IMG/VR virus record: IMGVR_UViG_3300032268_000986 | Location: 278,866 to 342,865 of that record | DNA: 64,000 nt | Reading direction: 5' to 3' (one strand) | Shown: positions 3,257 to 28,489 of the stretch, in pieces | Position numbering within the stretch: the first letter of the stretch is position 1 | Layout of the letters: each line of letters opens with the position of its first letter | Made by a program: the position numbers and the translations under genes | Notes under the pieces: generated by a model | The model's input: only the letters and a program-made list of their open reading frames with translations | Databases searched by the model: none | What the model was told of the DNA's origin: nothing

Positions 3257-3696
3257 TTGACATCTCGTCCCAATTGTCGATCGTGATCGTCCAGGTCTTT
3301 GGTAGAAACCACAGTCATCATGACATCCAGTTCGTCATCTCGATAAGTGGGATACAACTCCTGTAGACGCTTTCGTTTGGCACCGGCTCCGGCTTCTTTT
3401 TTCTTGGGCGCAACCCAGTTGTGCTTCATTGCCCCCAAGCCCGGGCTCACGGCAGTGGCACACAACCACTGCAATTTGGGGTGCCGGCCAATTGTGAAGA
3501 AGTGTTTGTTCAAGTAGTGGTTACAACTTTGCACATAGTACTCTTGCAACTCCTGAGCACCGTCCACACAACTACCCCAACGGATCATGAGAAAAGTACT
3601 GAACTTCTTGAGCTCTTCTGTGGTAAGACTGTTGTAGAACTCTCGGTTCTTGACGTCCAGTTGACGCATCTCGTTGTGTATTGATAGCTTATCCAT
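3253..3696 (-). CDS. Putative clamp-loader small subunit (T4 gp62-like)
   Basis: Start revised to ATG 3696 (MDKLSIHNEM). Size and pattern (FLMIRW...LNKH...QWL...KHNWVAPKKK) resemble gp62. Confidence 0.5.
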   Translation of the reverse strand: MDKLSIHNEMRQLDVKNREFYNSLTTEELKKFSTFLMIRWGSCVDGAQELQEYYVQSCNHYLNKHFFTIGRHPKLQWLCATAVSPGLGAMKHNWVAPKKKEAGAGAKRKRLQELYPTYRDDELDVMMTVVSTKDLDDHDRQLGRDVK

Positions 3697-4747
3697 ACTT
3701 GAAAATTTTCCTATAGACCTGTTGTTGGACTGGCAAATGTTGAAACCATCCCTCACCCCGGGTGTGATCCATCATGAGCTGGCGTGCTGTGAACTTCCAC
3801 CAGGCCTGAGTATTGTCCACTGTGCGCAGTACATCAATAGCTCGATCAATGTTGACATGCCGATGTGGTGCTGTTTCCAACTTGGCAATCAAATTGTCTC
3901 GAAATTCCCAGGGAATCAAGCCCAGTCCCTCTGCACCATCAGGATTGGCCAATACTGGTTGGAACGCATGTTCCGTGACCTGTTGCTGTGAAAGATAGTC
4001 AAACAATTGATCTATCCACCAAACATTAATGGCACTGATCACTGGTGCATAGGATAATTGTACATAAGATTGTGATTTACACCAAGCAATATTTTCTTCA
4101 ATTTGACTCCATTTGGTGCCACTGCGAACTATTTCGGCAATCTCTCCCACGGCATCAATGCTGGCATTGACATTGATATACTTGAACTTGGACCAGTAGT
4201 CTTTCACGTGTTTGTTCTTGTAGCCCAACACAGTCATATTGGTGCTGTACATCACACGAGGTTGCACCCGAGCTGCAATCAATTTTTCCAACAGCTGATA
4301 GTGCTGTGGATTCAGCAGTGGTTCACCGCCGGCAAAATACACCTGTTGACAATGACTCAAGTCAATGTCGCCCAATTCAACTTCTTCGTGTAAATGAATC
4401 ACCTGTTGACCCAGTTCACTGGCCCAGCTGGTGCTGAATCCTGGACCACAACTGCGACATTTCAAATTGCAGAGATTGTTGTTTCTAAAATCCAAGAAGT
4501 GAACCTGCAAGTTGGTCAAGTCAGTGGGATAGTGCTGAAACATCTTACGCCAGCCTTCTCGCTCAGGTGGGCATGAGTTCATGCACTCCTGAGGAATTTC
4601 ACCTCGCAAAAAAGCACCGCCTACTACGTCACGAACCTGTTCAGGACTGTCAAAGTGATCGCCGCCCCAGCTGCAACAGGGTGTGAACTTGCCGCCAGGC
4701 ATGTAGGTGACTGCGGTCCATGGAGCCTTGCAATAGATTTCACTCAT
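3689..4747 (-). CDS. Radical SAM protein with N-terminal twitch/SPASM-like Cys cluster
   Basis: CNLKCRSC (CxxxCxxC), FAGGEP, and N-terminal YCKAPW...PCC...C...C. Confidence 0.9.
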   Translation of the reverse strand: MSEIYCKAPWTAVTYMPGGKFTPCCSWGGDHFDSPEQVRDVVGGAFLRGEIPQECMNSCPPEREGWRKMFQHYPTDLTNLQVHFLDFRNNNLCNLKCRSCGPGFSTSWASELGQQVIHLHEEVELGDIDLSHCQQVYFAGGEPLLNPQHYQLLEKLIAARVQPRVMYSTNMTVLGYKNKHVKDYWSKFKYINVNASIDAVGEIAEIVRSGTKWSQIEENIAWCKSQSYVQLSYAPVISAINVWWIDQLFDYLSQQQVTEHAFQPVLANPDGAEGLGLIPWEFRDNLIAKLETAPHRHVNIDRAIDVLRTVDNTQAWWKFTARQLMMDHTRGEGWFQHLPVQQQVYRKIFKYG

Positions 4748-8916: not shown

Positions 8917-8953
8917 TATATTATAGCAAAATGGCGAATTTTGGTCAACCACT
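8917..8953 (-). promoter_or_regulatory. sigma70-type early promoter, copy 2 of a 37-bp exact direct repeat
   Basis: TTGACC (8943-8948)-17 bp-TATAAT (8920-8925). Confidence 0.85.
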
Positions 8954-9689
8954 ATTTCCACAAGTTTTTTATCAGCGGGTCACTGACTTGATGTGGCTTG
9001 GGAGTTCCGTGAAACACAATGACCGAAGCTTCAGGGTCAATCACAGCACCTGCACCGGGTTTGCTGAATGTGCGTGACGGAAATTGCATGCCACCGTCCT
9101 GTACCTGCCAGCGATAACTTTGCACATGTTTTTCAGGATAGAAGCGGCGTTTGTTGTGATCAATTACTGCACCAATGTAGTCTTGGTCCCCGGCATGTCG
9201 ACGCATGACATCTTCAAGGTTCTCGCCGCGAAACTTTTGCCACACCCAGTCAAACTGAACTGTGTTCCAGTACATGAGACTGCTGTTCATGCCCGAATAC
9301 CCAGTGCGTTGTAGATATCTAAAATCACGCAAGGTCCAAAAATAATCAGTATGGCCAGCTGTGGCCCAGGTCATGTCATTGAATACCACAACATCTAGGT
9401 CTAAATACAACAGAGGTCCTTGCCAGTGCTCACTGTTGAACAACTGCATCTTGTACCACCAGGACTTTTTGGGACCAGACACGCCGGCCCAGTCTTCTAA
9501 TATGTGTTTGATCATGTGTGGTGGTACTGATCGGTCATGTTCAGTGTACACATGCATGCGGGCACCACCTGGCAGCTGTCGGTTCAACATGCTGTGCAGT
9601 CGTTCCACATACTGCCAGTCGTATCCTGACCCGTGTATCACACAGGCACACTCGGTTACTCTAGGGCTGGTGCCAATCTTTTTAGCCAT
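8952..9689 (-). CDS. GT-A fold glycosyltransferase
   Basis: CVIHG..Y...YV.RL..M, WWYKMQLF, LYLDLD (DxD), GDQDYI, IVFHG.PKPH. Confidence 0.8.
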   Translation of the reverse strand: MAKKIGTSPRVTECACVIHGSGYDWQYVERLHSMLNRQLPGGARMHVYTEHDRSVPPHMIKHILEDWAGVSGPKKSWWYKMQLFNSEHWQGPLLYLDLDVVVFNDMTWATAGHTDYFWTLRDFRYLQRTGYSGMNSSLMYWNTVQFDWVWQKFRGENLEDVMRRHAGDQDYIGAVIDHNKRRFYPEKHVQSYRWQVQDGGMQFPSRTFSKPGAGAVIDPEASVIVFHGTPKPHQVSDPLIKNLWK

Positions 9690-10504
9690 AAACCTTGGGC
9701 AATTTCTTCAATGGTGTATTCAGTGTGTGCAATTTCAATCAACCAACGGTCACGATCAACTGTGTAGGGCTGGTTGATGTCTTGAATGGCCACGCTGACT
9801 GGATGTGCAAGACTGGACACATCCACCATGGGTCTTGCACCTGCCATGGCTGCTTGAACGCCTGGTCCTGAATTGTAGTTCAACACAGCATGATAACCAT
9901 AGTCAATGTTGAAACTGTCGTAGCTGCCGGGGATCTGTCGTGGATACTCAATCTCAGCACCACCGGGCAATAGAGTGATATCCAGGGGGCATCTGGGGTG
10001 TGGTCTTATCACAATGGGTCGGTCTGACACAGCACGTATTTCACGCACACGTTCGGCAATCCAGCGTTCTTGACAAGGAACATTGGCCAATTGCAGACTT
10101 TTTTTGTGTTGTGCGGCCACCAGTATGGCTGGTCGCAAATTGGGGTTGCGTTGCAGTTGCATGCCCAGTTGTCCGGGGCGGTCTGGATCTAGATCCTGCT
10201 GATGCCCGTAGTAGCCTTCGGCATTGATGTTGTTTACTGCTATTTTCCAAGTTGTGCCCCGTGATATTGCACCAACGTCAACTACTATGACAGGCCGTCC
10301 AGACTCACGATAGTGCTGATAAATGGCTTGATTTCCTGCCATGCGCCCGTTCCACAGCACACTCCAAACAATCACAGCATCAGCACTCATGCCACGTTCT
10401 TGTGCATGAATACCAGAGGATTTTAAACCAGCCAGTACAGCATCCATGACCGGGCGTGAATTTAATGCACAGTAAGAAGGAAAGTAGGCTACGGAACGGA
10501 TCAC
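9656..10504 (-). CDS. KpsS/capsule-synthesis-like GT-B glycosyltransferase (paralog 1)
   Basis: IVIRPHP and VLNYNSGPGVQAAMAG motifs, shared with three other genes in the block. Confidence 0.6.
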   Translation of the reverse strand: MIRSVAYFPSYCALNSRPVMDAVLAGLKSSGIHAQERGMSADAVIVWSVLWNGRMAGNQAIYQHYRESGRPVIVVDVGAISRGTTWKIAVNNINAEGYYGHQQDLDPDRPGQLGMQLQRNPNLRPAILVAAQHKKSLQLANVPCQERWIAERVREIRAVSDRPIVIRPHPRCPLDITLLPGGAEIEYPRQIPGSYDSFNIDYGYHAVLNYNSGPGVQAAMAGARPMVDVSSLAHPVSVAIQDINQPYTVDRDRWLIEIAHTEYTIEEIAQGLWLKRLAPALE

Positions 10505-10510
10505 TAAATA
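10504..10510 (+). promoter_or_regulatory. T4-type late promoter, leaderless
   Basis: CTAAATA, 5 nt, then ATG 10516; no SD. Confidence 0.65.
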
Positions 10511-10515
10511 TCCCT

Positions 10516-11316
10516 ATGAAATATAGTGTAGTTACCACTTTCAACGCAGAAGGTTATGAGAAATACGGGCGCAGAATGATTGAAACATTCATTCAAAACT
10601 GGCCTGCCACTGTGCAGTTGACCGTTTATGCCGAAGGCTGCAGAGTAAATGAAACGGCCGCCAACCTTGAAGTCTGTGACATTGCAGTGGTCACTGAACT
10701 CACTGCATTCAAGCAACAGTGGCAGGGCGTGGCCCGAGCCAACGGCGATGTCAGTGCTGATCCTGTTAGATCAAAACGTCGGGATGCCGGCAAAGGATTC
10801 AAGTGGGACGCTGTGAGATTTTCACACAAAGTCTACAGTATTTTTCACTGTGCAAAAAATACACACACTGACTGGTTAATTTGGATGGACGCAGACACTG
10901 TGTGTCACAGTCCCGTGACTGAACAGGATCTAACAAGACTATGTCCCGACAATCGAGATCTTTGTTTTCTTGGGCGCCGGGGCAAGTTCAGTGAGTGCGG
11001 ACTGTATGCAATGAATCTTGGCAGACCCAATACGAGAGATTTTTTAACTAAATTTCAAAAGTATTATGACGACGCTGAACAAGGAATTTTTACTCTAGAC
11101 GAATGGCATGACAGTTTTGTTTTTGATGCTGTTCGTCGGCAGACTAGTTTATACGAACTAGACTGGAGCAGTCATTTGATCACCGGAGAAGGTCATCCCT
11201 TGATCAATTCAGACTGGGGTGCATATCTAGATCATCTCAAAGGCAAGCGCAAGACCACAGGACGCAGTCCTGCCACAGACTTAAAAGTTCAACGAACCGA
11301 GGCATACTGGCAATGA
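10516..11316 (+). CDS. GT-A nucleotide-diphospho-sugar transferase
   Basis: Start revised to 10516 (MKYSVVTTF). Motifs RFSHKV, LIWMDADT (DxD), HDSFVFD, HLKG. Confidence 0.8.
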   Translation: MKYSVVTTFNAEGYEKYGRRMIETFIQNWPATVQLTVYAEGCRVNETAANLEVCDIAVVTELTAFKQQWQGVARANGDVSADPVRSKRRDAGKGFKWDAVRFSHKVYSIFHCAKNTHTDWLIWMDADTVCHSPVTEQDLTRLCPDNRDLCFLGRRGKFSECGLYAMNLGRPNTRDFLTKFQKYYDDAEQGIFTLDEWHDSFVFDAVRRQTSLYELDWSSHLITGEGHPLINSDWGAYLDHLKGKRKTTGRSPATDLKVQRTEAYWQ

Positions 11317-12113
11317 CCTGGATATTTCTCAACAAGAAAAACAGTGACGAGTACATAGAAATGTTTGCTCGTGGATGCAGTGCAGTGCCCACTGAGTTAG
11401 AAACCTGGCAGTACCAAGACAGTGATGCGCCCTTGGTGATCCGAGGCATCATGAAACACAAGATTATCAAACAGTGCTGGGCAGACAACCGACCATTCTG
11501 GTACATGGATTCCGGCTATGTTGGCAATAGACCCAGTACTCAAAATCCTCATGGTTGGAAACAGTGGCATAGGATAGTGCCCAACAACCTGCAACATGGT
11601 GCAGTGATCCCAAGGCCTGCTGATCGTTGGCAGCGGCATGACATTGCCATGCCTCGACGTCGGCATGGCAGCAAAATATTACTAGCAGCACCAGACGAAA
11701 AACCCTGTGTGTTTTATGACATCACTCTGTCTGACTGGATTGCACAAACCGTTGCCACAATCAAACAATACACTGACCGAGAAATTGTCATACGTGAGCG
11801 CAACCCCAATCGCCAGGCACGTGTGGCCAGTGACTTGCAATCAGCACTGATGGATGTGCATGCCGTGGTCACATTTAATTCTATTGCAGCCACCGAAAGT
11901 GTGCTGGCTGGTGTGCCGGCATTTGCTCTGGCACCGTCAAATGCTGCCATTCCAGTGTCCAACACTGACTTATCCAAAATCAACAACCCATGGTACCCTG
12001 ATCGAGATCAAATTCATGATTGGGCGTGCCATTTGGCCTATGGGCAGTTTCACAATTCTGAACTGCAGAATGGCACAGCGCACCGAATACTACAGGAGAC
12101 TCTCAATGCGTGA
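11313..12113 (+). CDS. KpsS/capsule-synthesis-like glycosyltransferase (paralog 2)
   Basis: YMDSGY, IVIRER, VVTFNSIAATESVLAGVP, W..HLAYGQF. Confidence 0.6.
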   Translation: MTWIFLNKKNSDEYIEMFARGCSAVPTELETWQYQDSDAPLVIRGIMKHKIIKQCWADNRPFWYMDSGYVGNRPSTQNPHGWKQWHRIVPNNLQHGAVIPRPADRWQRHDIAMPRRRHGSKILLAAPDEKPCVFYDITLSDWIAQTVATIKQYTDREIVIRERNPNRQARVASDLQSALMDVHAVVTFNSIAATESVLAGVPAFALAPSNAAIPVSNTDLSKINNPWYPDRDQIHDWACHLAYGQFHNSELQNGTAHRILQETLNA

Positions 12114-12756
12114 ACACTATGGCTGGTATTTCCCAGATGTTGACACACACTTTCCACAAATGCTAAAGAAAAGTGTTGATCGCGGTGGCCCCGCAGAATA
12201 TCAATTACCTGTGCGCCGTCGCAGTATTGAATTGTGTGCTGGACATGGCACTGCCTTGGACATTGGAGCCAATGTGGGCCTGTGGAGTCGTGACCTAGTG
12301 GACAACTTTTCCCAGGTGATTGCGTTTGAGCCCGTGGCCATCTTTAGAGAATGTCTGGAACGCAATGTGTCTGGCTCTAACTTTTCTATCAGCCCCTTGG
12401 CTCTGGGAAATCAAGAAACTCAGGCCACCATGATCATCACTCCAGGCAATACTGGACACAGTCACCTGGATCCTGCCAGCATGGGCACCGGTGATGTGAA
12501 AGTGGTGACTCTTGACAGCTTGAACATACCCAATGTTGACTATGTCAAGATTGACTGCGAAGGGTACGAGTATCGTGTGTTGCAAGGTGCAGAACAAACC
12601 ATTAAAACCTGTCGTCCTGTTGTGGTAGTGGAACAAAAACCGCATGCAGCCTACAGTGATCAATACGCACAGCATGCAGCCGTCGAGTTGCTGAAATCCT
12701 GGGGCATGACCCGGCTGGACCAAGTCAAGGATGACTGGATCATGGGATGGAACTGA
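12106..12756 (+). CDS. FkbM-family SAM methyltransferase
   Basis: Start revised to 12106 (MREHYGW, SD AGGAG). Motifs LDIGANVG, AFEP, VKIDCEGYE..VLQGA. Confidence 0.9.
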   Translation: MREHYGWYFPDVDTHFPQMLKKSVDRGGPAEYQLPVRRRSIELCAGHGTALDIGANVGLWSRDLVDNFSQVIAFEPVAIFRECLERNVSGSNFSISPLALGNQETQATMIITPGNTGHSHLDPASMGTGDVKVVTLDSLNIPNVDYVKIDCEGYEYRVLQGAEQTIKTCRPVVVVEQKPHAAYSDQYAQHAAVELLKSWGMTRLDQVKDDWIMGWN

Positions 12757-12783
12757 TAATAAAATTTTAAAATAGGAAATAGC

Positions 12784-13314
12784 ATGCCATCAAGTAATAA
12801 AGAAGGTAAGTCAGTGATAAGAGAATGGGTTACAGAATTTGGTCCTGACGTAAAAACTGTACTAGATCTTGGAGTCGGGAACGGAACTTATCATAGGCTG
12901 TATACCAGGAAGTCGCCAGCTCTTAAAGAAGCATACTGGATTGGCGTCGAGGCATGGGAGCCCTATATTCGTGAATTTGATTTGTTAACAAGATATAATA
13001 AGATTGTCAATGAAGATATTAGAACAGTAGATTTCAACACCTTGGGTCCAATCGATTTAGTGTTTGCAGGTGATGTATTGGAACATATAACCAAAGAAGA
13101 AGCAATTAAAGTAGTTGACAATCTATTAAAGGTTGCTAAGAAAATTATTGTTAGTATTCCTATTGTGCATTTTCCACAAGGCAAAGAAGAAGGAAATCCC
13201 TACGAAGCACATGTAAAGGATGATTGGTCACACACAGAAATGTTGGAAACTTTCCCTCAAATTAAACGATCATGGACCGGTAACATCATTGGAGTGTACC
13301 TATTAGAGTTATGA
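12784..13314 (+). CDS. Class I SAM-dependent methyltransferase (AT-rich)
   Basis: VLDLGVGNG, GDVLEH; visibly AT-richer than its neighbours. Confidence 0.85.
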   Translation: MPSSNKEGKSVIREWVTEFGPDVKTVLDLGVGNGTYHRLYTRKSPALKEAYWIGVEAWEPYIREFDLLTRYNKIVNEDIRTVDFNTLGPIDLVFAGDVLEHITKEEAIKVVDNLLKVAKKIIVSIPIVHFPQGKEEGNPYEAHVKDDWSHTEMLETFPQIKRSWTGNIIGVYLLEL

Positions 13315-14012
13315 AAGCATACATAATTAGACTGAAAAACAACGCCATGTCTGAGAAATACGCAGACCTTGGTGTTGCCCAGGCTCGCAAGTTTGGCATT
13401 GATGTTGAATACTTTGACGGCATCAACGGATTGGAATATCAACAGCATGTGACTGAATTGGGCATTGCGCCAAGATACAAATTCAAAAAAGGTCGAGCCG
13501 GGGTTTTTGGTTGCTTTCTAAGTCATTACTACCTATGGCAACAGTGTGCAGCAGGTGATCAGCCTTTTTTGATTCTTGAACACGACGGATATTTTGTCAA
13601 GACCTTGCCCAACAACATACTTGACACATTTACAGATGTGCTCAAACTTGATGATCAGGATCCTTATTCCAAGCACTACGACACCACAGTCACGTCTCAA
13701 CTCAATCAACCCGTAGTTGTAAACAAATATCACAACCCGCAAGCCAAGACTGTGAATGACGGATCAGATTTTGTTGACAAAATTGGCACAGGCAACTACA
13801 TTCGCGGCGCCTACAGTTACATCATCAAACCACATGCAGCACAACGGCTGATTGGCTGGATCAAACAAAATGGATTTGTTCCTGCCGATCAACAGATCGG
13901 CGATGCCGTGGTCGATATACAAGTAACCGTGCCCACCATAGCAAGGTTGCACCCTGACTATCACAACCGAATCAAAGAAATGTCTTTGACCGGGAATCCC
14001 GACCTGTTGTGA
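13311..14012 (+). CDS. GT25 (LPS biosynthesis Lex2B/LgtB-like) glycosyltransferase
   Basis: AYIIRL, FDGING, GCFLSHY.LW, LILEHD, AYSYII.P.AA..L, PAD. Confidence 0.85.
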   Translation: MKAYIIRLKNNAMSEKYADLGVAQARKFGIDVEYFDGINGLEYQQHVTELGIAPRYKFKKGRAGVFGCFLSHYYLWQQCAAGDQPFLILEHDGYFVKTLPNNILDTFTDVLKLDDQDPYSKHYDTTVTSQLNQPVVVNKYHNPQAKTVNDGSDFVDKIGTGNYIRGAYSYIIKPHAAQRLIGWIKQNGFVPADQQIGDAVVDIQVTVPTIARLHPDYHNRIKEMSLTGNPDLL

Positions 14013-14013
14013 T

Positions 14014-14958
14014 TTATTTTGTGCGATTTATTGTTTTGAGAAAAGGCAAAAACTTCTGATAGATGCTGCCATTACGAGCATCCTCATCGCTCCAATGTGC
14101 AGCCGCTAGATCATACACCCATTGAGTTCGATCAAACACCACCGGAGTGTTGATCTGAGAGATGTCATGGTTGGCCACTGCCCAGCTCACACAACTGCTG
14201 TCATCCGCAAACACTGGAACTCCGGCCAACACAGCAGCCACACTGGCCGAACTATTGAATACCACCGCGGCATGAGCATGAGAAAGATTGTCTTTTAGTG
14301 TTGCGGACAATGGGTCAAGTACATGCACGTTGAGCTGTCGACGATAATGCCGATTCCTAAAAATTGAAAAATCATCACTGGCATAGGTTCCTGGATGCGG
14401 TCGTATCATAATGGGTAGATCACTGTGTTGCCTTATCTCAGTGATCTTTTGATTGATCCAGGCTGTTGGATCCAGGGACTTCATTGCAAACCCACCATCT
14501 CGTTGCACACACAACAGTATGTAATTGCCAGACAACTTGGGAGGTGCCATGACAATGTTTAAATCACTGCTGATTCGTTGCCATTGGTCAGGACTGCTGT
14601 TGTGATTGGCATATTCGGCTTTGTCGTAGAACGGGCCTCCTAGACTGTAGCGCAAGTAACTGCCATGATCATCTAGATACTTGAAACAACTGGCATCAAT
14701 ACACATGGTATGCCGACCGGTTCGCCGTTGTTCAGCAATGATTTGTTTGCGTAGTTCAATGTTTCGGCCGCCAGTGTTGGTGGTAGCCCAGCCCAAGATC
14801 ACAGCCAAGTGACTGGGGGTATACCGATTTTCCCACTCTATTGCAACTGACGCTCCTTGGGCCCGTGCTCCTTCAGCAAAGGCTTCCAGGCATGCAATCT
14901 TGCGAGTGTGTTTGCGCGGGTTTGCCACCGAGCTGACATAAACAACAACATCAGCCAC
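14014..14958 (-). CDS. KpsS/capsule-synthesis-like glycosyltransferase (paralog 3)
   Basis: Start revised to GTG 14958, coupled to the upstream stop. Motifs IMIRPHPG, VVFNSSASVAAVLAGVP, W..DLAAAHW. Confidence 0.6.
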   Translation of the reverse strand: MADVVVYVSSVANPRKHTRKIACLEAFAEGARAQGASVAIEWENRYTPSHLAVILGWATTNTGGRNIELRKQIIAEQRRTGRHTMCIDASCFKYLDDHGSYLRYSLGGPFYDKAEYANHNSSPDQWQRISSDLNIVMAPPKLSGNYILLCVQRDGGFAMKSLDPTAWINQKITEIRQHSDLPIMIRPHPGTYASDDFSIFRNRHYRRQLNVHVLDPLSATLKDNLSHAHAAVVFNSSASVAAVLAGVPVFADDSSCVSWAVANHDISQINTPVVFDRTQWVYDLAAAHWSDEDARNGSIYQKFLPFLKTINRTK

Positions 14959-15937
14959 CGTTGAGAATTCTCCAAGCAGTTCCGTCTCGCATTTCTGGTT
15001 CAGTAAATTGACAATAAGACAAGTGTGCAGCCCAGGCCACAACTTCATCCAACGTGGGAATCTTGGGGGTTTCAATTTCACTCAGTGATTGGCTGCACAA
15101 GGCTGCGGCAGCATTAGGACCCAGTGTGATTGCTGGTTTGCCCAGTAACAATGCTTCCCCGGCTGCAATACTGGAAAATGTAACCAAGCAATGTACATCT
15201 CGGTCTAGTGCCATTTCCATAGTATCGTCGTTTACTCGTGTTGATCTACCTTGTTTAGTACGTATTACAATTTCTCGGTCAGTGTGTTGCTTGATTTCAT
15301 TGATGGTGGAATCCAACCAAGATTCAAGATTGATGTTATACAGATTCAAGAGTTTTTGACTGGGAGGAGCCAACAACACCTTGGACCCGGGTCTGAATTT
15401 TGTCAACTGTATTCCGGTGCGTTCCAGTCTGTCATGGGGCCTGTCTATGACTGGACCAAACTTTTGTACATCATTCAGTGTAACGCGATGAAACGTCTTC
15501 TTTTTGCCGTTGCCAAAATATCCAGTGTCAACGTAATAAAAATCACGATTGGCTGCTCGGCAGGCTGCCATTTCTTTCCTTTTGCTAATACCACGCAACA
15601 CACACGGTATCATGGAGTTAGCGTCCCGCTCCCAGCTACTGATTTGTCCGCCAGCTCCTTGCACAAAGCTCTGTAAAATAGGATCGTACATGTGCCCCTT
15701 TTCCTTGTATTTGACTTCGCCTGGATCTGACGCAATTGCCACCACTGTTTGCAATGCAACGGCGTTGCAGGACTGATGTATCTTGGCCGCGGTTATTCCA
15801 TAGTATGCGCCCGACGGATCCACACGGAACTTGAGGATATCTTCAAACAGTTGTCGCACATCTGGTGGCACCATGTCAAATGGCGACCTTGGCAATGGAG
15901 CCGGTTCTTGTTCTTGATCTTGATCTTGATCACTCAT
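14951..15937 (-). CDS. KpsS/capsule-synthesis-like glycosyltransferase (paralog 4)
   Basis: YYVDTGY, IVIRTK, LVTFSSIAAGEALLLGKP, W.AHLSYCQF; acidic low-complexity N-terminus. Confidence 0.6.
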   Translation of the reverse strand: MSDQDQDQEQEPAPLPRSPFDMVPPDVRQLFEDILKFRVDPSGAYYGITAAKIHQSCNAVALQTVVAIASDPGEVKYKEKGHMYDPILQSFVQGAGGQISSWERDANSMIPCVLRGISKRKEMAACRAANRDFYYVDTGYFGNGKKKTFHRVTLNDVQKFGPVIDRPHDRLERTGIQLTKFRPGSKVLLAPPSQKLLNLYNINLESWLDSTINEIKQHTDREIVIRTKQGRSTRVNDDTMEMALDRDVHCLVTFSSIAAGEALLLGKPAITLGPNAAAALCSQSLSEIETPKIPTLDEVVAWAAHLSYCQFTEPEMRDGTAWRILNGG

Positions 15938-16619
15938 GAGTTATTTGCTGACAATGCAGTGTGAGTTTGTGTTCTTGATGCCAGGCTTCATTCTGAGGAG
16001 TGTTGGCAAACTCATCAAAGCAGGGCGTTCCCAAGGTGTAGTGCAACAACTTGGCATTGGCATTGGGTCCAAACTCATCAGGTAACCAATTCCATTCTAT
16101 TGGCAGTTCACCGATGCGTGAATCATCGATCCAAGAAAATCTGTGCAGTTCTGCTCCGGTGGCCTTCTGCACGTATTCAGGAGTTAGTTTTCGATTTGGA
16201 AAACTGTTGCAGTTCCAGAGAATTACACTGCTCCAATTCTTGCGTGGGTAATCTTCGTTTTTGGCACCCAGGTACTTTGTTGGCATGCGTGTTTTATAGT
16301 TGTGTTTGACCACTTGCACATCCATGTAAGGATTTCTCATGTCCCAAAGTTCAGCAATGTCGCCACGCACAATCATGTCACCGTCGATAAAAATAGCCGA
16401 ACCAGTAAATCCCATCAGGTAAGGTACTAGGAAACGTGTGTAGATAAAGTGGTTGCTACCGTCGGTGTGTGTTTCGTCGTAATCTTTAAATAGATTAAGT
16501 GCCACTGGCACAATACTCACAGGACGACTTGCATTTCTAATAATACTGTTAACGCAGGTATGATATGCTATGGCCTCACGTGGATCATAGCCAATAAAAA
16601 TTGGTATGATCTCTTTCAT
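15930..16619 (-). CDS. GT-A (GT8-like) glycosyltransferase
   Basis: IFIGYDPRE, TRFLVP, FIDGDM (DxD), RKNWSS, LLHYTLGTP. Confidence 0.85.
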   Translation of the reverse strand: MKEIIPIFIGYDPREAIAYHTCVNSIIRNASRPVSIVPVALNLFKDYDETHTDGSNHFIYTRFLVPYLMGFTGSAIFIDGDMIVRGDIAELWDMRNPYMDVQVVKHNYKTRMPTKYLGAKNEDYPRKNWSSVILWNCNSFPNRKLTPEYVQKATGAELHRFSWIDDSRIGELPIEWNWLPDEFGPNANAKLLHYTLGTPCFDEFANTPQNEAWHQEHKLTLHCQQITHE

Positions 16620-17380
16620 CGACGCTCAATGTCCTCTTCAACACAATCTTCACCGTATTGAATTTCAATTAGTCGCAAGGGCTTGTCAGTTTCGTTGCAC
16701 AACTGGTGCCACTCGTTAAGTTTGATCCAAGTACTCTGATGACGGGCAGGACTGGCCATTAGATCACGATCAGTTGAGTGTGGATCCACGGTGTACACTG
16801 TGGCTTCACCTTCGGCCACAAACCAAAACTCAGCACGTTTTTCATGCCGTTGCATGCTCAAGCATGTCTTGGGACTCACAGTGAGTTCTTTGAGTTTGAC
16901 ATGATTTCCAACTTCGTGCAACACACGATAATAGCCCCAGGCACGACTGGTACGGGGTTTTTTCCAGTCTTCAAGTATCCAGCTAGAACTATTTTTCTTG
17001 TCCGCACCGCCAACACCAAACGCAAATGTCAATTGATCATCGACAACATCCATTTCTGGAATGTTCAGGTGTGTGCGATCACCACCATTGGCAAACACCA
17101 AGGTTGCGTCAGGGTAGTGTGCTCTGACTTGACGTATGAACTCCTTGGCCGAACCATCAGCATCGTCAAATGTGTACACTTCGTCCACCATGGCAAGATT
17201 GTTTATCACACACAATCTTTCTGTCCAGGGCATGAATGGGCGACCTTTTTTGCGTGTGAGCCATTCGTCTGAATTGAGTCCCACAATCAGCATGTCGCCT
17301 AGAGCGCGGGCAGCTTTGAAATACGCAATATGCCCAGAATGCAGCGGATCAAAGCCGCCAGTTACAAGTACAATTTTCAT
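16616..17380 (-). CDS. Cytidylyltransferase-family (RfaE-II/TagD-like) nucleotidyltransferase fused to a ManC-type C-terminal cupin
   Basis: Start revised to 17380 (MKIVLVTGGFDPLHSGH, HxGH). GLNSD, NGGDR, SSSWI; then WGYYRVL, LSMQRH..RAEFW, IEIQYG..C.E.DI.R. Confidence 0.85.
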   Translation of the reverse strand: MKIVLVTGGFDPLHSGHIAYFKAARALGDMLIVGLNSDEWLTRKKGRPFMPWTERLCVINNLAMVDEVYTFDDADGSAKEFIRQVRAHYPDATLVFANGGDRTHLNIPEMDVVDDQLTFAFGVGGADKKNSSSWILEDWKKPRTSRAWGYYRVLHEVGNHVKLKELTVSPKTCLSMQRHEKRAEFWFVAEGEATVYTVDPHSTDRDLMASPARHQSTWIKLNEWHQLCNETDKPLRLIEIQYGEDCVEEDIERR

Positions 17381-17400
17381 ACAGGTATTTACACCTGTAT
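17379..17400 (-). promoter_or_regulatory. Late promoter GTAAATA inside an 8-bp hairpin that masks the start codon
   Basis: Minus strand ATACAGGT-GTAAAT-ACCTGTAT-G; the 3' arm includes the AT of the ATG. Confidence 0.7.
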
Positions 17401-18095: not shown

Positions 18096-19150
18096 TATTC
18101 TTCCTCAACGTCAACAACAGGTGTGGCATCCTTTTGATTGCCAAAATCTTTCATCACAGTGTCAAGACAGCCGTCAGTATTGGCTTCCCATGCCTTGCGA
18201 AACTTCTTGATGATCTCGCCATCGCTTGTGGTAAACACTAGACTGTTGCCTTCGCGTTTGAGCAGGCCTTTTTTCTCAATCAAGTCCACAAGACCTGAGT
18301 AAGGGCTCATGCCTGTTTCATAAGGAATCTTGACTTGCACTCCCTCGAACGGCTTGGCATAGCGTGTTTTCATTACTTTACAGCCAGCACGAATACCAGT
18401 TACATCTGAAATCTTGTTGCCGTCTTCGTCCTCTTTGAGTTTCATCTTCTTCATGGCCACCACAATTGAGCTGGCGTAAATGAAACCTTGACCACCTGAA
18501 ATCTTGTCGTCTGGATCAAACATGTCTTGACTGGCGTATGTGTGATTGGTACAAACCAGGCCCACGTTGTAACTACCAAACATGTTGACACAGTTACGCA
18601 CCAAGGCGGTAAGAGCTTTGGGCTTGCGACCTAGGTCACCTTTCATTTCGCCTGCATCAAATTGATTCACATCAGTGGGTGTCAGCAACATGCCCAGGCT
18701 GTCAATTACAAACATGACCTTGGGTCGCTCGGCAGGATCAAGAGCTTTGTAGTCGCTCATGAATGTAGAGATAGTTTTAGCTACATCGTCAATCATGGCC
18801 ATTGACAATTTGAGTAACTTGCTGTCACTGGTATCAACTCCCAGGGCCTTGAGCCAGTCTTCGTCCAAGGCATTTTCGCTGTCAATCAACACTACAAAGA
18901 TGCCTTGCTGTTGTGCATGTTTGATAATGTTGCCACTACAGATGTAACTTTTACCTGCGCCCGAGTCACCGGCAAACACCGTGACCTTGCCCAAGGGGAT
19001 ACCTCGATCAAAGTCTCCTGAGATCAAGTAGTTCAAAGCATAGTTGCCTGTGGAGATCCAGTCTGTGGGATCATTGAATCCAATCGACAATCCGTCGATA
19101 CTTTTTGTAATTTCCTTGCGGAATTTTGATACGTCAAATGGTTTAGCCAT
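18095..19150 (-). CDS. uvsX: RecA-like recombinase UvsX
   Basis: ISTG, GDSGAGKS, LIDSENA, VIDSLG, TNHTY, SGG.G..YASS, KTR. Confidence 0.92.
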   Translation of the reverse strand: MAKPFDVSKFRKEITKSIDGLSIGFNDPTDWISTGNYALNYLISGDFDRGIPLGKVTVFAGDSGAGKSYICSGNIIKHAQQQGIFVVLIDSENALDEDWLKALGVDTSDSKLLKLSMAMIDDVAKTISTFMSDYKALDPAERPKVMFVIDSLGMLLTPTDVNQFDAGEMKGDLGRKPKALTALVRNCVNMFGSYNVGLVCTNHTYASQDMFDPDDKISGGQGFIYASSIVVAMKKMKLKEDEDGNKISDVTGIRAGCKVMKTRYAKPFEGVQVKIPYETGMSPYSGLVDLIEKKGLLKREGNSLVFTTSDGEIIKKFRKAWEANTDGCLDTVMKDFGNQKDATPVVDVEEE

Positions 19151-20741
19151 GGTATTTTCCTTTGTAAATGATATCTGCTATTTCTGGATGTGTCTGATTA
19201 AATTTTTGATCTCTTATATTGTCTAATTTTAGCATGAATTTTGATAGTTCGTCAATTAAATCTGGTGAATATTTGTTCTGTTTGAGTAAGGCAATGATAG
19301 GAAATACATTGTGTTTTATTAACTTGTCATGATCAATTTGAGATAATTTGTCAATGACTTGAGTTGTTAATTCCGTATTCATTGCTGTTATGCTTAAAAA
19401 TTTTGGGTGTTCTAATAAATTAAAATTTAATTTGTTAAATTTTTTTGTATCTACCCAGGTTATTAACTGATCAAGATAATAAACATTTTGAACATTAACT
19501 GTGGTAAAAATACTAAGGATCATGTTTGGTAGTTTGTTTTCTAAGAATTTATCTAAGTTAACATTGACCAAATCCCATTTCCCCCCGCGCTCTAATTCAA
19601 ACCGTGTACCTATGTTATCTATGCTAAATGCAATGTCAACTTGTCGGAACAACTTCCATTTTTCAAACAAATGTGCTGGGTACACAGACCCGTTTGAATT
19701 GTAATGTAGTCTAATTTTGTGTGCCAGGTCATGCTCTATTAGATAATCTAAAAATGTCTCTTGTTGCTTGATGAGAAACGGCTCGCCACCATAAAAATCA
19801 ATGTTAACCAGCTGATTTCCCAACGTGTTAAACATTTTCCAAATTTGATCATTTTTGACCCACTGTCCTTTTCGATTGAGATTTTTGAGATCAATAATAG
19901 AGTCAAAGTGTCGTGCCTGTTCTTCTGCTATTTTTGAACTAGCGTCTGAATTGCATATTCTGCATGCAAAATTACAAAGATTTCCTAGTTTTAAATCTAG
20001 ACTAACTAAATTTTCAAGTTGATCTTGCTCTATGTCTAAACATTGCGCATCAATCCCAAGACAATCACTGAACCACTGTCGATTTGATTGCCCTTTATGT
20101 TGTTCTTTCATCCAGCAGCTCGAACATCCGGCAGGACGATCCCCGTCGAGAAATTGTGTTCTTAACCTTGTTAAATAGTCACTGTGGTAGACTTCTTCAA
20201 TACTATTAGTATTGATATTGTAGGGAACATTGTTGGAATCCGTTATTGATTCTTTATACACACAACAAGGTCTAAATTCGCCTTGTGACGAAATTTCTAA
20301 ATGTGCCCATGGACTAAAACAAAATGTGTCAGGCAAGGTAATTGCAGGATTCTTAACAACCTCAGGTGCGACGTCACTAAATTTTATGTCCAGTGTTGAA
20401 AAAATACAATCATCTGTTGAATAGTTGCGTCTAACTAATTCAAGATGATCTTGATCAATGTCAGAACCAGAACTACAAATTAAAATAAAAAAGTTAGATA
20501 TATCTAACAGCGTTGCGCTTTTTTGTATGTGTATTAAAGTTTCAACTGATATCAAATTTCTACTGTACAGAACTATTCGACTATGATCACTGTATTCTGG
20601 TTGGTACCATTGTTTAAATAATTTATACAGTGTTTTTCGAGGTTGACCAAGTAATTGATCTAGGTCGATTACACCAACTATTTGATAGTTGTAATGTTGT
20701 TCTAAATACTGTTTTAGGTCAGTTGAGGGTATCGGTGTCAT
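19143..20741 (-). CDS. Radical SAM/SPASM protein with N-terminal extension (AT-rich insertion)
   Basis: FCFSPW...PCC...GCSSC, CNFACRIC, FYGGEP; AT-rich codon usage unlike its flanks. Confidence 0.88.
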   Translation of the reverse strand: MTPIPSTDLKQYLEQHYNYQIVGVIDLDQLLGQPRKTLYKLFKQWYQPEYSDHSRIVLYSRNLISVETLIHIQKSATLLDISNFFILICSSGSDIDQDHLELVRRNYSTDDCIFSTLDIKFSDVAPEVVKNPAITLPDTFCFSPWAHLEISSQGEFRPCCVYKESITDSNNVPYNINTNSIEEVYHSDYLTRLRTQFLDGDRPAGCSSCWMKEQHKGQSNRQWFSDCLGIDAQCLDIEQDQLENLVSLDLKLGNLCNFACRICNSDASSKIAEEQARHFDSIIDLKNLNRKGQWVKNDQIWKMFNTLGNQLVNIDFYGGEPFLIKQQETFLDYLIEHDLAHKIRLHYNSNGSVYPAHLFEKWKLFRQVDIAFSIDNIGTRFELERGGKWDLVNVNLDKFLENKLPNMILSIFTTVNVQNVYYLDQLITWVDTKKFNKLNFNLLEHPKFLSITAMNTELTTQVIDKLSQIDHDKLIKHNVFPIIALLKQNKYSPDLIDELSKFMLKLDNIRDQKFNQTHPEIADIIYKGKYHG

Positions 20742-25303: not shown

Positions 25304-25863
25304 GTGATATTGGGCTTTAATAATGTGTACGAGGTCAGTCTAAATGTGCCCACAGGCACAGGGTTGAGCATGCCATGAAACAAGCCAGTGGTTTCAGCAT
25401 TGTTTAAAGGGTTGGTCATTATGTATCCTGTGTTGGCCTGAGATTCAAACTGTTTTCTCACTTGCTGGCCTTGACTGTCATGATAAAAACAGGTGCCCTG
25501 TTCAGAATGGCCTATCCAATACATCTGCATGGCGCCCGGCAACGCACCGTCGGTATGTATAGGGCAATCAAACCCTTCATGATCCAACCAAAACACAGTA
25601 TGTCCATGATGATGACTGAGTAAAGGCATGTTGATCATGGTGCTGATACGAAACCATATCTGTTGTTGATTGGTTGTCCATTGGTCTCCCCAGGACAGAT
25701 CATGAAGTTCAATTCTGCGTCGAGGCCAGGTTTCTTGGCAAGGTTGAGTACTGTGTGGGACATTCAACCAGTCCGTGGCAAGTATTTGTTGCAAAAGATC
25801 TGAGGGCACCAGGTCAGTTACCTGGAACAGATTTGGAACACTGTCAACTGCGGTTATTTGCAT
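25300..25863 (-). CDS. 2OG-Fe(II) oxygenase-like protein
   Basis: Start probably ATG 25863. HTD (HxD), G..T.FY, N.GY, distal HG and R.TSY. Confidence 0.7.
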   Translation of the reverse strand: MQITAVDSVPNLFQVTDLVPSDLLQQILATDWLNVPHSTQPCQETWPRRRIELHDLSWGDQWTTNQQQIWFRISTMINMPLLSHHHGHTVFWLDHEGFDCPIHTDGALPGAMQMYWIGHSEQGTCFYHDSQGQQVRKQFESQANTGYIMTNPLNNAETTGLFHGMLNPVPVGTFRLTSYTLLKPNIT

Positions 25864-28068: not shown

Positions 28069-28108
28069 GATCTCTAACTTTCCTTGTTAGAGTATTTAGC
28101 TATTTATG

Positions 28109-28489
28109 TTAATAGCCATTAAAGGGTCGGACTGGACTCTGTGTGTCCACAAACGTGGGTTCTGTGCTGTCAGGGGTTGATACTAGTTGTTTGCCGTCCG
28201 GAGTGTTGGTCATGGTCAGTGCAGTATCAATTATTTGTGCGATTCCTGCGTTCATGCCAGCAATGACCCCGTGTTCGCCAAATGCAGTTTCACCGCTCCA
28301 TGCTGGCAGGTTGTCGGTTAATCCATCTGTGCCTGCATCACTTCTGGCTCGTGCCATGGCCACACTGAATCTATAGTTGTTGTAGGGATCAGCAGCACTG
28401 AGCCCGGGAATCACATAGGTATGACGCATGGGATTGGCCTGCTCAGGTGGCAGGGATTTATGCTCGGTTACAAATTCACGGGCTCGCAT
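28109..28489 (-). CDS. Candidate internal head protein, paralog B
   Basis: N-terminus MRAREFVTE; ends QSPVRPFNGY; paralogous to 28489-28854. Confidence 0.6.
   Translation of the reverse strand: MRAREFVTEHKSLPPEQANPMRHTYVIPGLSAADPYNNYRFSVAMARARSDAGTDGLTDNLPAWSGETAFGEHGVIAGMNAGIAQIIDTALTMTNTPDGKQLVSTPDSTEPTFVDTQSPVRPFNGY

What the first reader, a model, noticed from the sequence alone, without database searches (positions are those of the whole stretch)
8952..17380. Ten-gene glycan-synthesis island under late-promoter control, with four KpsS-like paralogs
Seen: three GT-A enzymes, a GT25, four paralogous GT-B proteins sharing IxIRx(H/K)P-like, V(T/F)xNS..A..G.P and W...LA..Q(F/W) motifs, two methyltransferases and a nucleotidyltransferase-cupin fusion. 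Two arms start at leaderless late promoters (10504 +, 17386 -). Established: KpsS/KpsC are CMP-beta-Kdo transferases of capsule biosynthesis, and FkbM-like enzymes often methylate sugars. Inference: a near-complete pathway for a methylated oligosaccharide made late in infection. It could supply the virion glycan, or remodel the host surface for superinfection exclusion or lysis timing. Late timing argues against simple early host takeover.
Basis: partly seen in the sequence, partly recalled or inferred. Interest (0 to 1): 0.75.

Follow-up and report, generated by a model that had tools for sequence, protein, structure and literature searches.

The report
Phage sugar-chain assembly gene cassette
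A 343-kb freshwater phage carries eleven genes for enzymes that add or methylate sugars; four are old copies of a virus-only enzyme family shaped like bacterial capsule Kdo transferases but without their key catalytic aspartate, and related phages hold the same cassette, with a changeable middle, at the same place.

Summary
They are four KpsC-fold paralogs (B, D, H, I), GT8 (J), GT25 (G), two further DxD transferases (A, C), FkbM and class-I methyltransferases (E, F), and an RfaE-II-like nucleotidyltransferase fused to a PMI cupin (K).

The four copies are ancient paralogs, not in-phage duplicates. The locus is a conserved syntenic cassette between uvsY and an AAA/uvsW pair. Twenty complete cassettes show 18 architectures.

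TAAATA-N5-ATG heads both arms and is conserved at K and C orthologs only. A gp55 homolog exists, so late timing is plausible but unproven, and genes B and A lie outside it.

The phage encodes no Kdo or sialic-acid synthesis genes, so this is not a near-complete pathway. The acceptor is unresolved.

The parts
8952..9689 (-). Gene A: GT-A-type glycosyltransferase with a DLD motif, 245 aa. It is the second gene of the B-A pair.
   Evidence: phrog_1962 glycosyltransferase, E 1.8e-24. No Pfam or PDB sequence hit. An ortholog follows the B ortholog in 70 of 82 related loci.
9656..10504 (-). Gene B: KpsC-fold paralog of the QxxxS + RxHP type, 282 aa, GTG start. Key residues are D76, Q132, S136 and R167-P-H169-P170.
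   Evidence: AF2 pLDDT 96.6. Foldseek and VIA top hits are KpsC, WbbB and KrkA. hhalign against E. coli KpsC-N gives E 8.4e-6.
10505..10518 (+). TAAATA-N5-ATG element that heads the plus-strand arm (C-D-E-F-G). It lies 1 nt from the divergent B start codon.
   Evidence: The same element, in frame, is found at 40 of 72 C orthologs against 0 of 79 B orthologs.
10516..11316 (+). Gene C: probable GT-A nucleotide-sugar transferase with a DAD motif, 266 aa from the motif-linked ATG.
   Evidence: PF00535 at 22.3 bits, below the 23.3 cut-off. Atlas places it in a viral family with distant PF03407/GT8 neighbours.
11313..12113 (+). Gene D: KpsC-fold paralog of the D/I type, 266 aa. It has Pro at the Gln site and R-E-R-N in place of RxHP.
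12103..12756 (+). Gene E: FkbM-family methyltransferase, 217 aa from ATG 12103.
   Evidence: PF05050 75 bits, TIGR01444 98 bits, phrog_8156. An FkbM domain is fused to a family domain in P0101.
12784..13314 (+). Gene F: small class-I SAM methyltransferase, 176 aa.
   Evidence: PF08241 at 25.9 bits against a cut-off of 21.2. It is rare in relatives, found in 2 of 82 loci.
13311..14012 (+). Gene G: GT25 glycosyltransferase, 233 aa. It is the last gene of the plus arm, and its stop lies 1 nt from the stop of H.
   Evidence: PF01755, E 3.6e-17, 63 bits. Present in 23 of 82 related loci.
14014..14958 (-). Gene H: KpsC-fold paralog of the QxxxG + RxHP type, about 314 aa from GTG 14958.
14951..15937 (-). 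Gene I: KpsC-fold paralog of the D/I type with an 80-aa acidic N-terminal extension, 328 aa. It has R-T-K-Q in place of RxHP.
   Evidence: An I-type domain is fused behind a J-like GT8 domain in P0016 and P0029.
15930..16619 (-). Gene J: GT8 glycosyltransferase with a DGD motif, 229 aa.
   Evidence: PF01501 at 30.5 bits. phrog_28018, E 7e-40. 38% identical over its full length to the N-terminal half of the fusion protein P0016.
16616..17380 (-). Gene K: RfaE-domain-II-like nucleotidyltransferase fused to a type-II PMI cupin, 254 aa from the motif-linked ATG. It is the first gene of the minus arm (K-J-I-H).
   Evidence: PF01467 and PF01050. TIGR02199, E 6e-22, below its cut-off. PDB relatives are ECT, HldC and TagD. 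The fusion is virus-wide, with one cluster of 1,223 members.
17378..17391 (-). TAAATA-N5-ATG element that heads the minus-strand arm.
   Evidence: TAAATA-N5-ATG is found at 27 of 34 K orthologs, and at 0 of 28 UvsY, 0 of 32 I and 0 of 44 H orthologs.

Best explanation
The locus is a cytoplasmic glycan-assembly and tailoring cassette of a clade of freshwater jumbo myophages. These phages have T4-like replication and late-transcription genes, and their nearest cultured relatives by UvsX are the Phosso, Atu_ph07, CBB and GAP32 group.

Shown:
- Eight soluble transferases, two methyltransferases and one nucleotidyltransferase-cupin enzyme are packed into two convergent operons (C-D-E-F-G and K-J-I-H) plus a divergent pair (B-A).
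- The four paralogs belong to a large virus-specific family with the modified GT-B fold of retaining beta-Kdo transferases.
- B and H retain the CMP-binding (K/R)xHP motif, the Gln that binds the Kdo carboxylate, and the general-base acid.
- None of the four has the Asp nucleophile.
- The four copies are ancient lineages that are co-inherited.
- The cassette ends are conserved, and the middle differs in almost every related phage.

Inferred:
- The enzymes build a short, partly methylated oligosaccharide step by step. It resembles an LPS core in its ingredients: an acidic ulosonic or other CMP-linked unit, hexoses added by GT8 and GT25, and possibly a heptose-like unit activated by K.
- Donors come mostly from the host's nucleotide-sugar pools.
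- Without the Asp nucleophile, the B and H types probably transfer directly from the CMP-linked donor in one step. That would be inverting transfer, or phospho-transfer with CMP leaving.
- The two arms are switched on from gp55-type late promoters that give leaderless mRNAs.
- The acceptor is most likely a virion protein made at the same time. The hypervariable middle then gives related phages different surface glycans.
For: Enzyme calls.

Fold of the paralogs:
- The AF2 model of B has pLDDT 96.6.
- The top 20 Foldseek PDB hits are all WbbB or KpsC, with KrkA further down the list; best E 3.5e-7.
- The top 8 Swiss-Prot models are KpsC, KpsS, LipA, LipB, LpsZ and FixF.

Residue mapping onto KpsC-N, E 8.4e-6 over 210 columns:
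- E66 aligns with an acidic residue in 90 of 90 family members.
- Q156 aligns with Q132.
- D160 aligns with S136.
- KVHP aligns with RPHP.
- The roles of these residues come from PMC10148158 and PMC12887879.

Family size and viral range.

Pathway coupling: the family domain is fused to a J-like GT8 domain and to an FkbM domain in other viruses.

Ancient paralogy.

Synteny and variability: 592 or more relatives in IMG/VR, and 20 complete cassettes with 18 architectures.

No membrane proteins in the cassette.

Promoter element:
- 4 sites against 0.43 expected in the window.
- 18 against 2.5 expected genome-wide.
- Conserved only at K orthologs (27 of 34) and C orthologs (40 of 72).
- The TerL operon opens with the same element.
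- A gp55 homolog is present, E 1.9e-7.

A late or structural setting in another phage: the CcrColossus family member lies between a tail protein, a sialyltransferase-like gene, a GT9 gene and the lysis cassette.
Against: - No biochemical or expression data exist for any family member.
- The donor nucleotide is inferred from a motif alone.
- D and I lack that motif, so they may use another donor or be non-catalytic.
- The cassette lies among recombination and replication genes (gp32, uvsX, uvsY, uvsW-like), not among structural genes.
- B and A have no TAAATA element.
- The K arm could also be read through from uvsX-uvsY.
- GT8, GT25 and RfaE-like enzymes are classic LPS-core enzymes, which fits a host-envelope acceptor equally well.
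- No acceptor protein was identified.
- RNA evidence is limited to contigs of relatives in lake metatranscriptomes and carries no timing information.
Confidence: 0.55

Rival explanations
1. Host-envelope remodelling. The same enzymes act at the inner face of the cytoplasmic membrane on lipid A-core or a phosphatidylglycerol-linked primer, and host machinery exports the product. This changes the cell surface, which would exclude superinfection or stop progeny phages from sticking to cell debris.
For: - Every recognisable enzyme type belongs to LPS-core, LOS or capsule-primer chemistry: KpsC/KpsS fold, GT8 and GT25, RfaE-II-like.
- The enzymes are soluble or peripheral, as core transferases are.
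- The phage encodes no exporter, so it would use the host's.
- B and A lack the late element and lie upstream of, and in the same orientation as, the AAA and uvsW-like genes, so they could be expressed earlier.
- Hypervariability is what is expected of a receptor-related glycan.
Against: - If the two arms really are late, little time is left for export before lysis.
- The host is unknown, so no matching core structure can be checked.
- In CcrColossus the related cluster sits in the tail and lysis region.
Confidence: 0.3
2. The KpsC-fold paralogs are not ulosonic-acid transferases. They are phosphodiester-forming transferases that use a CDP-linked alcohol or sugar made by K and release CMP, as in teichoic-acid or Stealth-type chemistry. 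The glycan would then be phosphate-bridged.
For: - The N-domain of K matches cytidylyltransferases: ECT E 1.6e-12, TagD E 1.8e-8, and TIGR01518 E 1e-10.
- K heads the operon that holds I and H in most relatives.
- Loss of the Asp nucleophile with retention of the CMP-phosphate-binding His-Pro fits a reaction in which CMP is the leaving group.
- The phage has no CMP-Kdo or CMP-sialic acid synthetase.
Against: - The best match of K is RfaE domain II, an adenylyltransferase, E 6e-22.
- TagF-type structures are not among the top 50 fold hits.
- B and H keep the Gln that binds the Kdo carboxylate in KpsC.
- A basal clade of the family keeps the full QxxxD + HP signature of true Kdo transferases.
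Confidence: 0.15
3. DNA hypermodification. The cassette decorates phage DNA bases with sugars, as in T4 glucosylation and the recently described Kdo, heptose and oligosaccharide modifications of 5hmC.
For: - The cassette lies among replication and recombination genes.
- Phage clusters holding a cytidylyltransferase and GT-B enzymes put heptose or Kdo on 5hmC (Pyle et al., 10.1101/2023.12.21.572611).
Against: - The genome has no thymidylate-synthase-like hydroxymethylase (PF00303) and no C5-cytosine methyltransferase (PF00145).
- No TET/JBP hit was found, but that search's control was silent.
- The paralogs resemble KpsC and WbbB, not T4 beta-glucosyltransferase, which is absent from the top 50 fold hits.
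- Eight transferases plus sugar methyltransferases is far more than any known DNA system uses.
Confidence: 0.05
4. Only B and H are enzymes. D and I, which lack Gln and His-Pro, are catalytically dead paralogs kept as scaffolds or acceptor-binding subunits for their neighbours J (GT8) and E (FkbM).
For: - D and I lack three of the four KpsC catalytic or donor-binding residues.
- The I-type domain is fused to GT8, and a family domain is fused to FkbM, in other viruses. This is as expected for a non-catalytic partner domain.
Against: - The D/I clade keeps R109, D76, R167, S212 and E267 almost invariant.
- It replaces His with Lys or Arg in 21 of 21 members, and these residues can still bind a phosphate.
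- That pattern points to a conserved, altered pocket rather than decay.
Confidence: 0.2

Closest known systems
Retaining beta-Kdo transferases: KpsC and KpsS (GT107, Pfam PF05159 Capsule_synth), WbbB (GT99), KrkA (GT140)
   Different: The Asp nucleophile, described as absolutely conserved and essential, is Ser in B, Gly in H, Leu in I and Pro in D. D and I also lack Gln and His-Pro. No Pfam PF05159 hit was found. The proteins are 270-330 aa, single-module and virus-encoded. The neighbouring genes are other glycosyltransferases and methyltransferases, not kps export genes.
Virus-encoded virion glycosylation systems: mycobacteriophage capsid and tail-tube glycosylation, and chlorovirus capsid glycans made by cytoplasmic viral transferases and sugar methyltransferases. 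This is from my own knowledge; Freeman et al. 2023 is listed in the references of PMC12619734.
   Same: Several soluble viral transferases plus methyltransferases act in the cytoplasm, with no lipid carrier or exporter genes. Glycan structure varies between related viruses.
   Different: The enzyme families differ, and no KpsC-fold enzymes are reported there. Here no glycosylated protein is known, and the locus sits among recombination genes.
LPS core and LOS assembly enzymes: GT8 (WaaI/WaaJ type), GT25 (LgtB/Lic2 type), HldE/RfaE domain II
   Same: J, G and the N-domain of K match these families.
   Different: All matches are distant. K is fused to a PMI-type cupin, a fusion found almost only in viruses. 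The phage has no heptose kinase, phosphatase or GmhA, and no Kdo synthesis genes.
T4-type late promoters (TATAAATA, read by gp55-RNA polymerase; own knowledge)
   Same: The A/T-rich TAAATA core stands alone without a -35 box. A gp55 homolog is present, and the terminase operon carries the element.
   Different: The core is shorter, and only one full TATAAATA occurs in 64 kb. The element sits a fixed 5 nt before the ATG, so the mRNA would be leaderless. Late timing has not been measured.
Phage DNA sugar-hypermodification gene clusters (Pyle et al.)
   Same: Both are multi-transferase viral clusters with a cytidylyltransferase-like enzyme, and Kdo and heptose are possible sugars.
   Different: No 5hmC- or 5hmU-generating enzyme was found in this genome. 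The GT-B enzymes there resemble T4 beta-GT, whereas these resemble KpsC and WbbB.

Membership tests
Retaining beta-Kdo transferases (GT99/GT107/GT140) | Modified GT-B fold closest to KpsC, WbbB or KrkA | tested here: met
Retaining beta-Kdo transferases (GT99/GT107/GT140) | (K/R)xHP motif that binds CMP | tested here: inconclusive
   Met in B (R167-P-H-P) and H. Not met in I (R-T-K-Q) or D (R-E-R-N). The motif definition comes from PMC12887879.
Retaining beta-Kdo transferases (GT99/GT107/GT140) | QxxxD motif with the absolutely conserved Asp nucleophile | tested here: not met
   KpsC Q156/D160 align with B Q132/S136. H has Q/G, I has P/L and D has P/P. By clade the nucleophile position is Ser in 40 of 42, Gly in 12 of 12, and variable in the D/I clade.
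Retaining beta-Kdo transferases (GT99/GT107/GT140) | General-base acid (KpsC Glu66) | tested here: met
   The aligned column is Glu or Asp in 90 of 90 family members and Asp in all four window paralogs. The role of Glu66 comes from PMC10148158.
Pfam PF05159 Capsule_synth (KpsS/KpsC) | Score above the Pfam gathering threshold | tested here: not met
   No hit even at E 10 for any of the four paralogs. Only 3 of 90 family members hit weakly, best E 6e-5.
Retaining beta-Kdo transferases (GT99/GT107/GT140) | Transfer of Kdo from CMP-beta-Kdo with retention of configuration | not testable with these tools
   Needs enzyme assays and intact-protein mass spectrometry.
T4-type late transcription unit | gp55-type late sigma factor encoded by the phage | tested here: met
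   phmmer with T4 gp55 hits the ORF at genome 13738-14637(-), E 1.9e-7.
T4-type late transcription unit | TATAAATA-like -10 element at the transcript start, enriched and conserved | tested here: inconclusive
   The TAAATA core at a fixed N5 before the ATG is enriched and conserved at K and C orthologs only. The full octamer occurs once in the window, which is the chance level.
T4-type late transcription unit | Transcripts appear late in infection | not testable with these tools
   No RNA run holds this phage. Only contigs of relatives were found, with no time information.
GT8, GT25, FkbM methyltransferase (Pfam) | Score above the gathering threshold | tested here: met
   J 30.5 against 24.3, G 63.3 against 24, E 75.2 against 22.7.
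GT2 (Pfam PF00535) for gene C | Score above the gathering threshold | tested here: not met
   22.3 bits against 23.3. Calling C a GT-A enzyme rests on its DAD motif and its Atlas neighbours.
Phage DNA sugar-hypermodification clusters | Enzyme that makes 5-hydroxymethyl-pyrimidine (ThyA-like hydroxymethylase, or C5-MT plus TET/JBP) | tested here: not met
   PF00303 and PF00145 are absent, and their controls were positive. PF12851 is absent, but its control was silent.
Capsule or O-antigen export-type loci | Membrane components in the locus (initiating transferase, flippase, polymerase or ABC transporter) | tested here: not met
   None of the 11 products has a membrane-spanning segment. The maximum 19-residue hydropathy is 1.78, and it falls in a Rossmann strand-helix.

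The most novel reading that the evidence does not exclude
The QxxxS, QxxxG and Pro/Lys types form a new, virus-specific glycosyltransferase family built on the KpsC/WbbB scaffold, with thousands of members. This family has given up the covalent Asp intermediate and works by a different mechanism: one-step inverting transfer of an ulosonic acid, or CMP-releasing phospho-transfer. Sets of two to five of these enzymes, together with a swap-in middle module, give freshwater jumbo phages a serotype-like, late-made surface glycan.
Probability: 0.3. Interest if true: 0.8.

Novelty: new variant of a known kind. Interest (0 to 1): 0.62.

Why it matters
Retaining beta-Kdo transferases are considered an isolated branch of glycosyltransferases, defined by an invariant Asp that forms a covalent sugar adduct. 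Here the same scaffold appears in thousands of viral proteins, and in most of them that Asp is replaced by Ser or Gly while the rest of the active site is kept. This is a natural experiment on how the mechanism can change, and it can be tested directly with existing CMP-Kdo assays.

Separately, the cassette has conserved ends and a middle that differs in 18 of 20 related phages. That suggests abundant lake phages diversify a glycan much as bacteria diversify O-antigens. This bears on virion surface chemistry, host range and receptor masking in uncultured phages.

Tried and rejected
- **Nucleotide search.** A megablast of the island against 50,697 phage records found nothing.
- **Single-sequence fold.** A single-sequence AF2 run on H was useless, pLDDT 34. 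It used one of the two structure jobs, so H, D, I, A, C and K were not modelled.
- **PDB with a shallow profile.** The four-sequence profile found nothing in PDB sequences. The 90-sequence profile was needed.
- **Recent duplication.** In-phage duplication was rejected by the tree.
- **Horizontally acquired island.** Rejected, because GC content is ordinary and the locus is syntenic in relatives.
- **Late class via structural genes.** I tried to classify the TAAATA-led genes as late through known structural genes. Pfam gp23, portal, sheath and tube models did not hit this genome. PHROG and tblastn annotation of motif-led ORFs gave mostly 'unknown'. Only the terminase operon and a virion structural protein gave support.
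- **RNA evidence.** No run holds this phage. Laying four metatranscriptomes gave only contigs of relatives at 80-90% identity, with no 5' ends.
- **Sigma-70 promoters and terminators.** Scans were at chance level, except for one strong promoter just after gene A.
- **Context of basal family members.** Contigs carrying the basal QxxxD-type members were too short to show context.
- **IMG/VR scan.** The scan with the full family alignment failed for lack of a conserved stretch. A B-clade alignment worked.
- **Literature.** Searches found no description of this viral family or of the leaderless TAAATA element. The 'moraphage' lineage paper concerns a different phage group.

Full report
**Where the window lies**

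The window is the last 64 kb of a 342,865-bp IMG/VR virus record rated 99% complete. Its UvsX-like recombinase is 65-67% identical to those of Sinorhizobium phage Phosso, Vibrio phage 2.275.O, CBB, GAP32 and Atu_ph07. The phage is therefore an uncultured jumbo myophage with T4-like replication genes. Near-identical DNA occurs in freshwater and lake metagenomes.

**The observation**

Between 8952 and 17380 there are eleven tightly packed ORFs, not ten.

| Gene | Coordinates | Assignment |
|---|---|---|
| A | 8952-9689(-) | phrog_1962 glycosyltransferase, E 1.8e-24, DLD motif |
| B | 9656-10504(-) | KpsC-fold paralog |
| C | 10516-11316(+) | sub-threshold GT2 (22.3 against 23.3 bits), DAD motif, viral nucleotide-sugar-transferase-like neighbours |
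| D | 11313-12113(+) | KpsC-fold paralog |
| E | 12103-12756(+) | FkbM methyltransferase |
| F | 12784-13314(+) | class-I SAM methyltransferase |
| G | 13311-14012(+) | GT25, 63 bits |
| H | 14014-14958(-) | KpsC-fold paralog |
| I | 14951-15937(-) | KpsC-fold paralog |
| J | 15930-16619(-) | GT8, 30.5 bits |
| K | 16616-17380(-) | cytidylyltransferase-like domain plus PMI-type cupin |

- The N-domain of K best matches RfaE domain II (E 6e-22), below that model's cut-off.
- B, D, H and I are homologous. D-I is 43% identical (E 5e-60), and the other pairs range from E 8e-18 to 1e-7.
- A profile of the family finds exactly these four copies in the genome.

**What the four paralogs are**

They hit no Pfam family, not even PF05159 at E 10.

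A profile search of 1.84 billion representatives found 4,535 clusters at E 1e-3 or better and 3,106 at 1e-10 or better. The ESM Atlas neighbours are about 100% viral and unnamed.

With a 90-sequence alignment (A3), AlphaFold gave a model of B at pLDDT 96.6. The fold searches agree:
- The 20 best Foldseek PDB hits are all retaining beta-Kdo transferases (WbbB or KpsC), E down to 3.5e-7; KrkA appears lower in the list.
- Among Swiss-Prot models the top eight are KpsC, KpsS, LipA, LipB, LpsZ and FixF.

At the sequence level:
- The profile reaches WbbB (E 0.0034) over the RPHP-to-NS stretch, and KpsC at E 0.14.
- hhalign against E. coli CFT073 KpsC-N (fetched) gives E 8.4e-6 over 210 columns.

**Membership test**

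The literature defines these enzymes by four features (PMC12887879; PMC10148158):
- a (K/R)xHP motif that binds CMP;
- a QxxxD motif whose Gln binds the Kdo carboxylate;
- the Asp of that motif, 'absolutely conserved', which forms the covalent Kdo adduct;
- a general-base Glu (KpsC E66).

In the hhalign and family alignments the mapping is as follows:

| KpsC residue | Family column | State |
|---|---|---|
| E66 | position 76 | Glu or Asp in 90 of 90 members; Asp in all four window proteins |
| K-V-H-P | R167-P-H169-P170 | present in B and H |
| Q156 | Q132 | present in B and H |
| D160 | position 136 | Ser in B, Gly in H, Leu in I, Pro in D |

- I and D also have Pro in place of Gln.
- I and D have R-T-K-Q and R-E-R-N in place of RxHP.

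These states are properties of whole clades, not accidents:

| Clade | Gln site | Nucleophile site | RxHP |
|---|---|---|---|
| B clade | Gln | Ser in 40 of 42 | 42 of 42 |
| H clade | Gln | Gly in 12 of 12 | 12 of 12 |
| D/I clade | Pro in 19 of 21 | variable | Lys or Arg replaces His in 21 of 21 |
| Small basal clade | Gln | Asp in 9 of 11 (full QxxxD) | His-Pro kept in 9 of 11 |

The window's proteins are therefore relatives of beta-Kdo transferases that fail the defining nucleophile test. The conserved remainder of the pocket argues that they are still enzymes. For B and H it also argues that they still bind a CMP-linked, probably carboxylated, donor. A one-step transfer without a covalent intermediate is an inference.

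**Age of the paralogs**

I built a maximum-likelihood tree of 96 family members. It is a quick IQ-TREE search with SH-aLRT support, because the careful search did not finish. It puts B, H, D and I in four separately supported clades. Each paralog has a closer relative in another phage:
- I with P0001, 72% identity;
- H with P0002, 61%;
- D with a gene in L014, 57%;
- B with a gene in L013, 58%.

D and I share a 99%-supported super-clade. The copies are therefore old and co-inherited, not duplicated within this phage.

**Evidence that the neighbours work together**

- In other viruses an I-type domain is fused behind a GT8 domain. That GT8 domain is 38% identical to J over its whole length (P0016, E 4e-45).
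- A family domain is also fused behind an FkbM domain (P0101).
- Here J sits directly upstream of I, and E directly downstream of D.

**The locus across phages**

Two long contigs (339 kb and 255 kb) show the same order next to uvsX. A scan of IMG/VR found at least 592 relatives of B.

In 82 loci the recurrent order is: UvsX, UvsY-like, K, J, I or D, H, a variable middle, (E, D), C, then divergently B, A, an AAA ATPase and a UvsW-like helicase (UvsY; helicase).

Of 20 cassettes complete from K to the AAA gene, 18 have different architectures, with two to five family copies (mode four). The differences lie in the middle: GT25, methyltransferases and unassigned ORFs.

GC content is unremarkable. 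This is a conserved cassette with a hypervariable centre, like an O-antigen locus, rather than an acquired island.

Analogous clusters exist in cultured phages:
- Pelagibacter phage Mosig has methyltransferase, methyltransferase, hypothetical gene, GT, family member, sulfotransferase, hypothetical gene, GT.
- Caulobacter phage CcrColossus has a tail protein, a sialyltransferase-like gene, a family member, an NDP-sugar transferase and a GT9, followed by the lysis genes.

**What is missing**

- The genome has no KdsB/NeuA-type CMP-sugar synthetase, no NeuB and no KdsA.
- No KdsB or KpsF homolog occurs in the 82 related loci.
- None of the eleven proteins has a membrane-spanning segment.

The cassette therefore assembles and tailors a glycan in the cytoplasm. 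It draws mainly on host nucleotide sugars and on whatever K activates. It is not a near-complete pathway.

**Promoters**

TAAATA-N5-ATG occurs at the starts of C and K. It is enriched in the window (4 sites against 0.43 expected) and genome-wide (18 against 2.5). There is a sharp spacing peak at N5.

The strongest evidence is comparative. In the related loci the in-frame element is present at these ortholog starts:

| Ortholog | Sites with element |
|---|---|
| K | 27 of 34 |
| C | 40 of 72 |
| J | 2 of 35 |
| G | 1 of 23 |
| A | 0 of 73 |
| B | 0 of 79 |
| D | 0 of 64 |
| E | 0 of 57 |
| H | 0 of 44 |
| I | 0 of 32 |
| UvsX | 0 of 18 |
| UvsY | 0 of 28 |
| AAA | 0 of 44 |
| UvsW | 0 of 38 |

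- The element also opens the operon that contains the large terminase, followed by a virion structural protein.
- The genome encodes a T4 gp55-like sigma factor.
- Late, leaderless expression of the two arms is thus a reasonable inference, but it has not been measured.
- B starts 11 nt from C on the other strand and has no such element.
- A strong sigma-70-like promoter lies just after the stop of A.
- RNA data were uninformative.

**Acceptor**

Three targets were considered.
- **DNA** is unlikely. No hydroxymethyl-pyrimidine-forming enzyme was found, and the fold is not that of T4 beta-GT. I raised this rival because phage clusters are now known to put Kdo and heptose on 5hmC.
- **Virion proteins.** In favour are the late-type promoters, the absence of export genes and the CcrColossus context.
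- **Host envelope lipids.** In favour are the LPS-core-like enzyme set and the fact that B-A lie outside the late units.

The evidence does not decide between virion proteins and host envelope lipids. I put the virion reading slightly ahead.

**Verdict**

- The most interesting point is not the island as such. It is the very large, unnamed viral family on the KpsC/WbbB scaffold that has replaced the catalytic aspartate, and its use in sets within a conserved but internally variable phage glycan cassette.

Noticed in passing
window 3689-4747(-), 19143-20741(-), 25854-26996(-): There are three radical-SAM genes within 27 kb. One has a SPASM domain and lies between the gp32-like SSB and uvsX. Another is the first gene of the terminase operon.
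   Followed up: no
whole genome; window 26996, 27452, 32547, 38605, 57066, 62393: TAAATA at a fixed 4-6 nt before the ATG heads 24 ORFs genome-wide. The N5 form occurs 18 times against 2.5 expected. This implies a class of leaderless mRNAs in this phage.
   Followed up: partly
genome 13738-14637(-), outside the window: This ORF has similarity to the T4 late sigma factor gp55 (phmmer E 1.9e-7).
   Followed up: partly
window 8948-8920(-): A near-consensus sigma-70 promoter (TTGACC-17-TATAAT with an extended TG) lies directly after the stop of gene A, upstream of the AAA ATPase and uvsW-like genes.
   Followed up: no
window 28000-32000: AT skew is strongly negative here (-0.21 to -0.31). The region overlaps a 700-aa ORF (29322-31424) that matches only PHROGs of unknown function.
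   Followed up: no
L013:9983-10000: In one relative the junction between the divergent C and B orthologs is the palindrome GGTTAAATATTTAACC, which carries TAAATA on both strands.
   Followed up: no
window 16616-17380(-) and Atlas clusters: The cytidylyltransferase-like plus PMI-cupin fusion (K) is itself a widespread, almost purely viral protein family with no studied member. One cluster has 1,223 members, 97% of them viral.
   Followed up: partly
window 27015-27452(-) and 38605-38952(+): An endonuclease (phrog_452) and an HNH endonuclease both start at TAAATA-linked ATGs.
   Followed up: no
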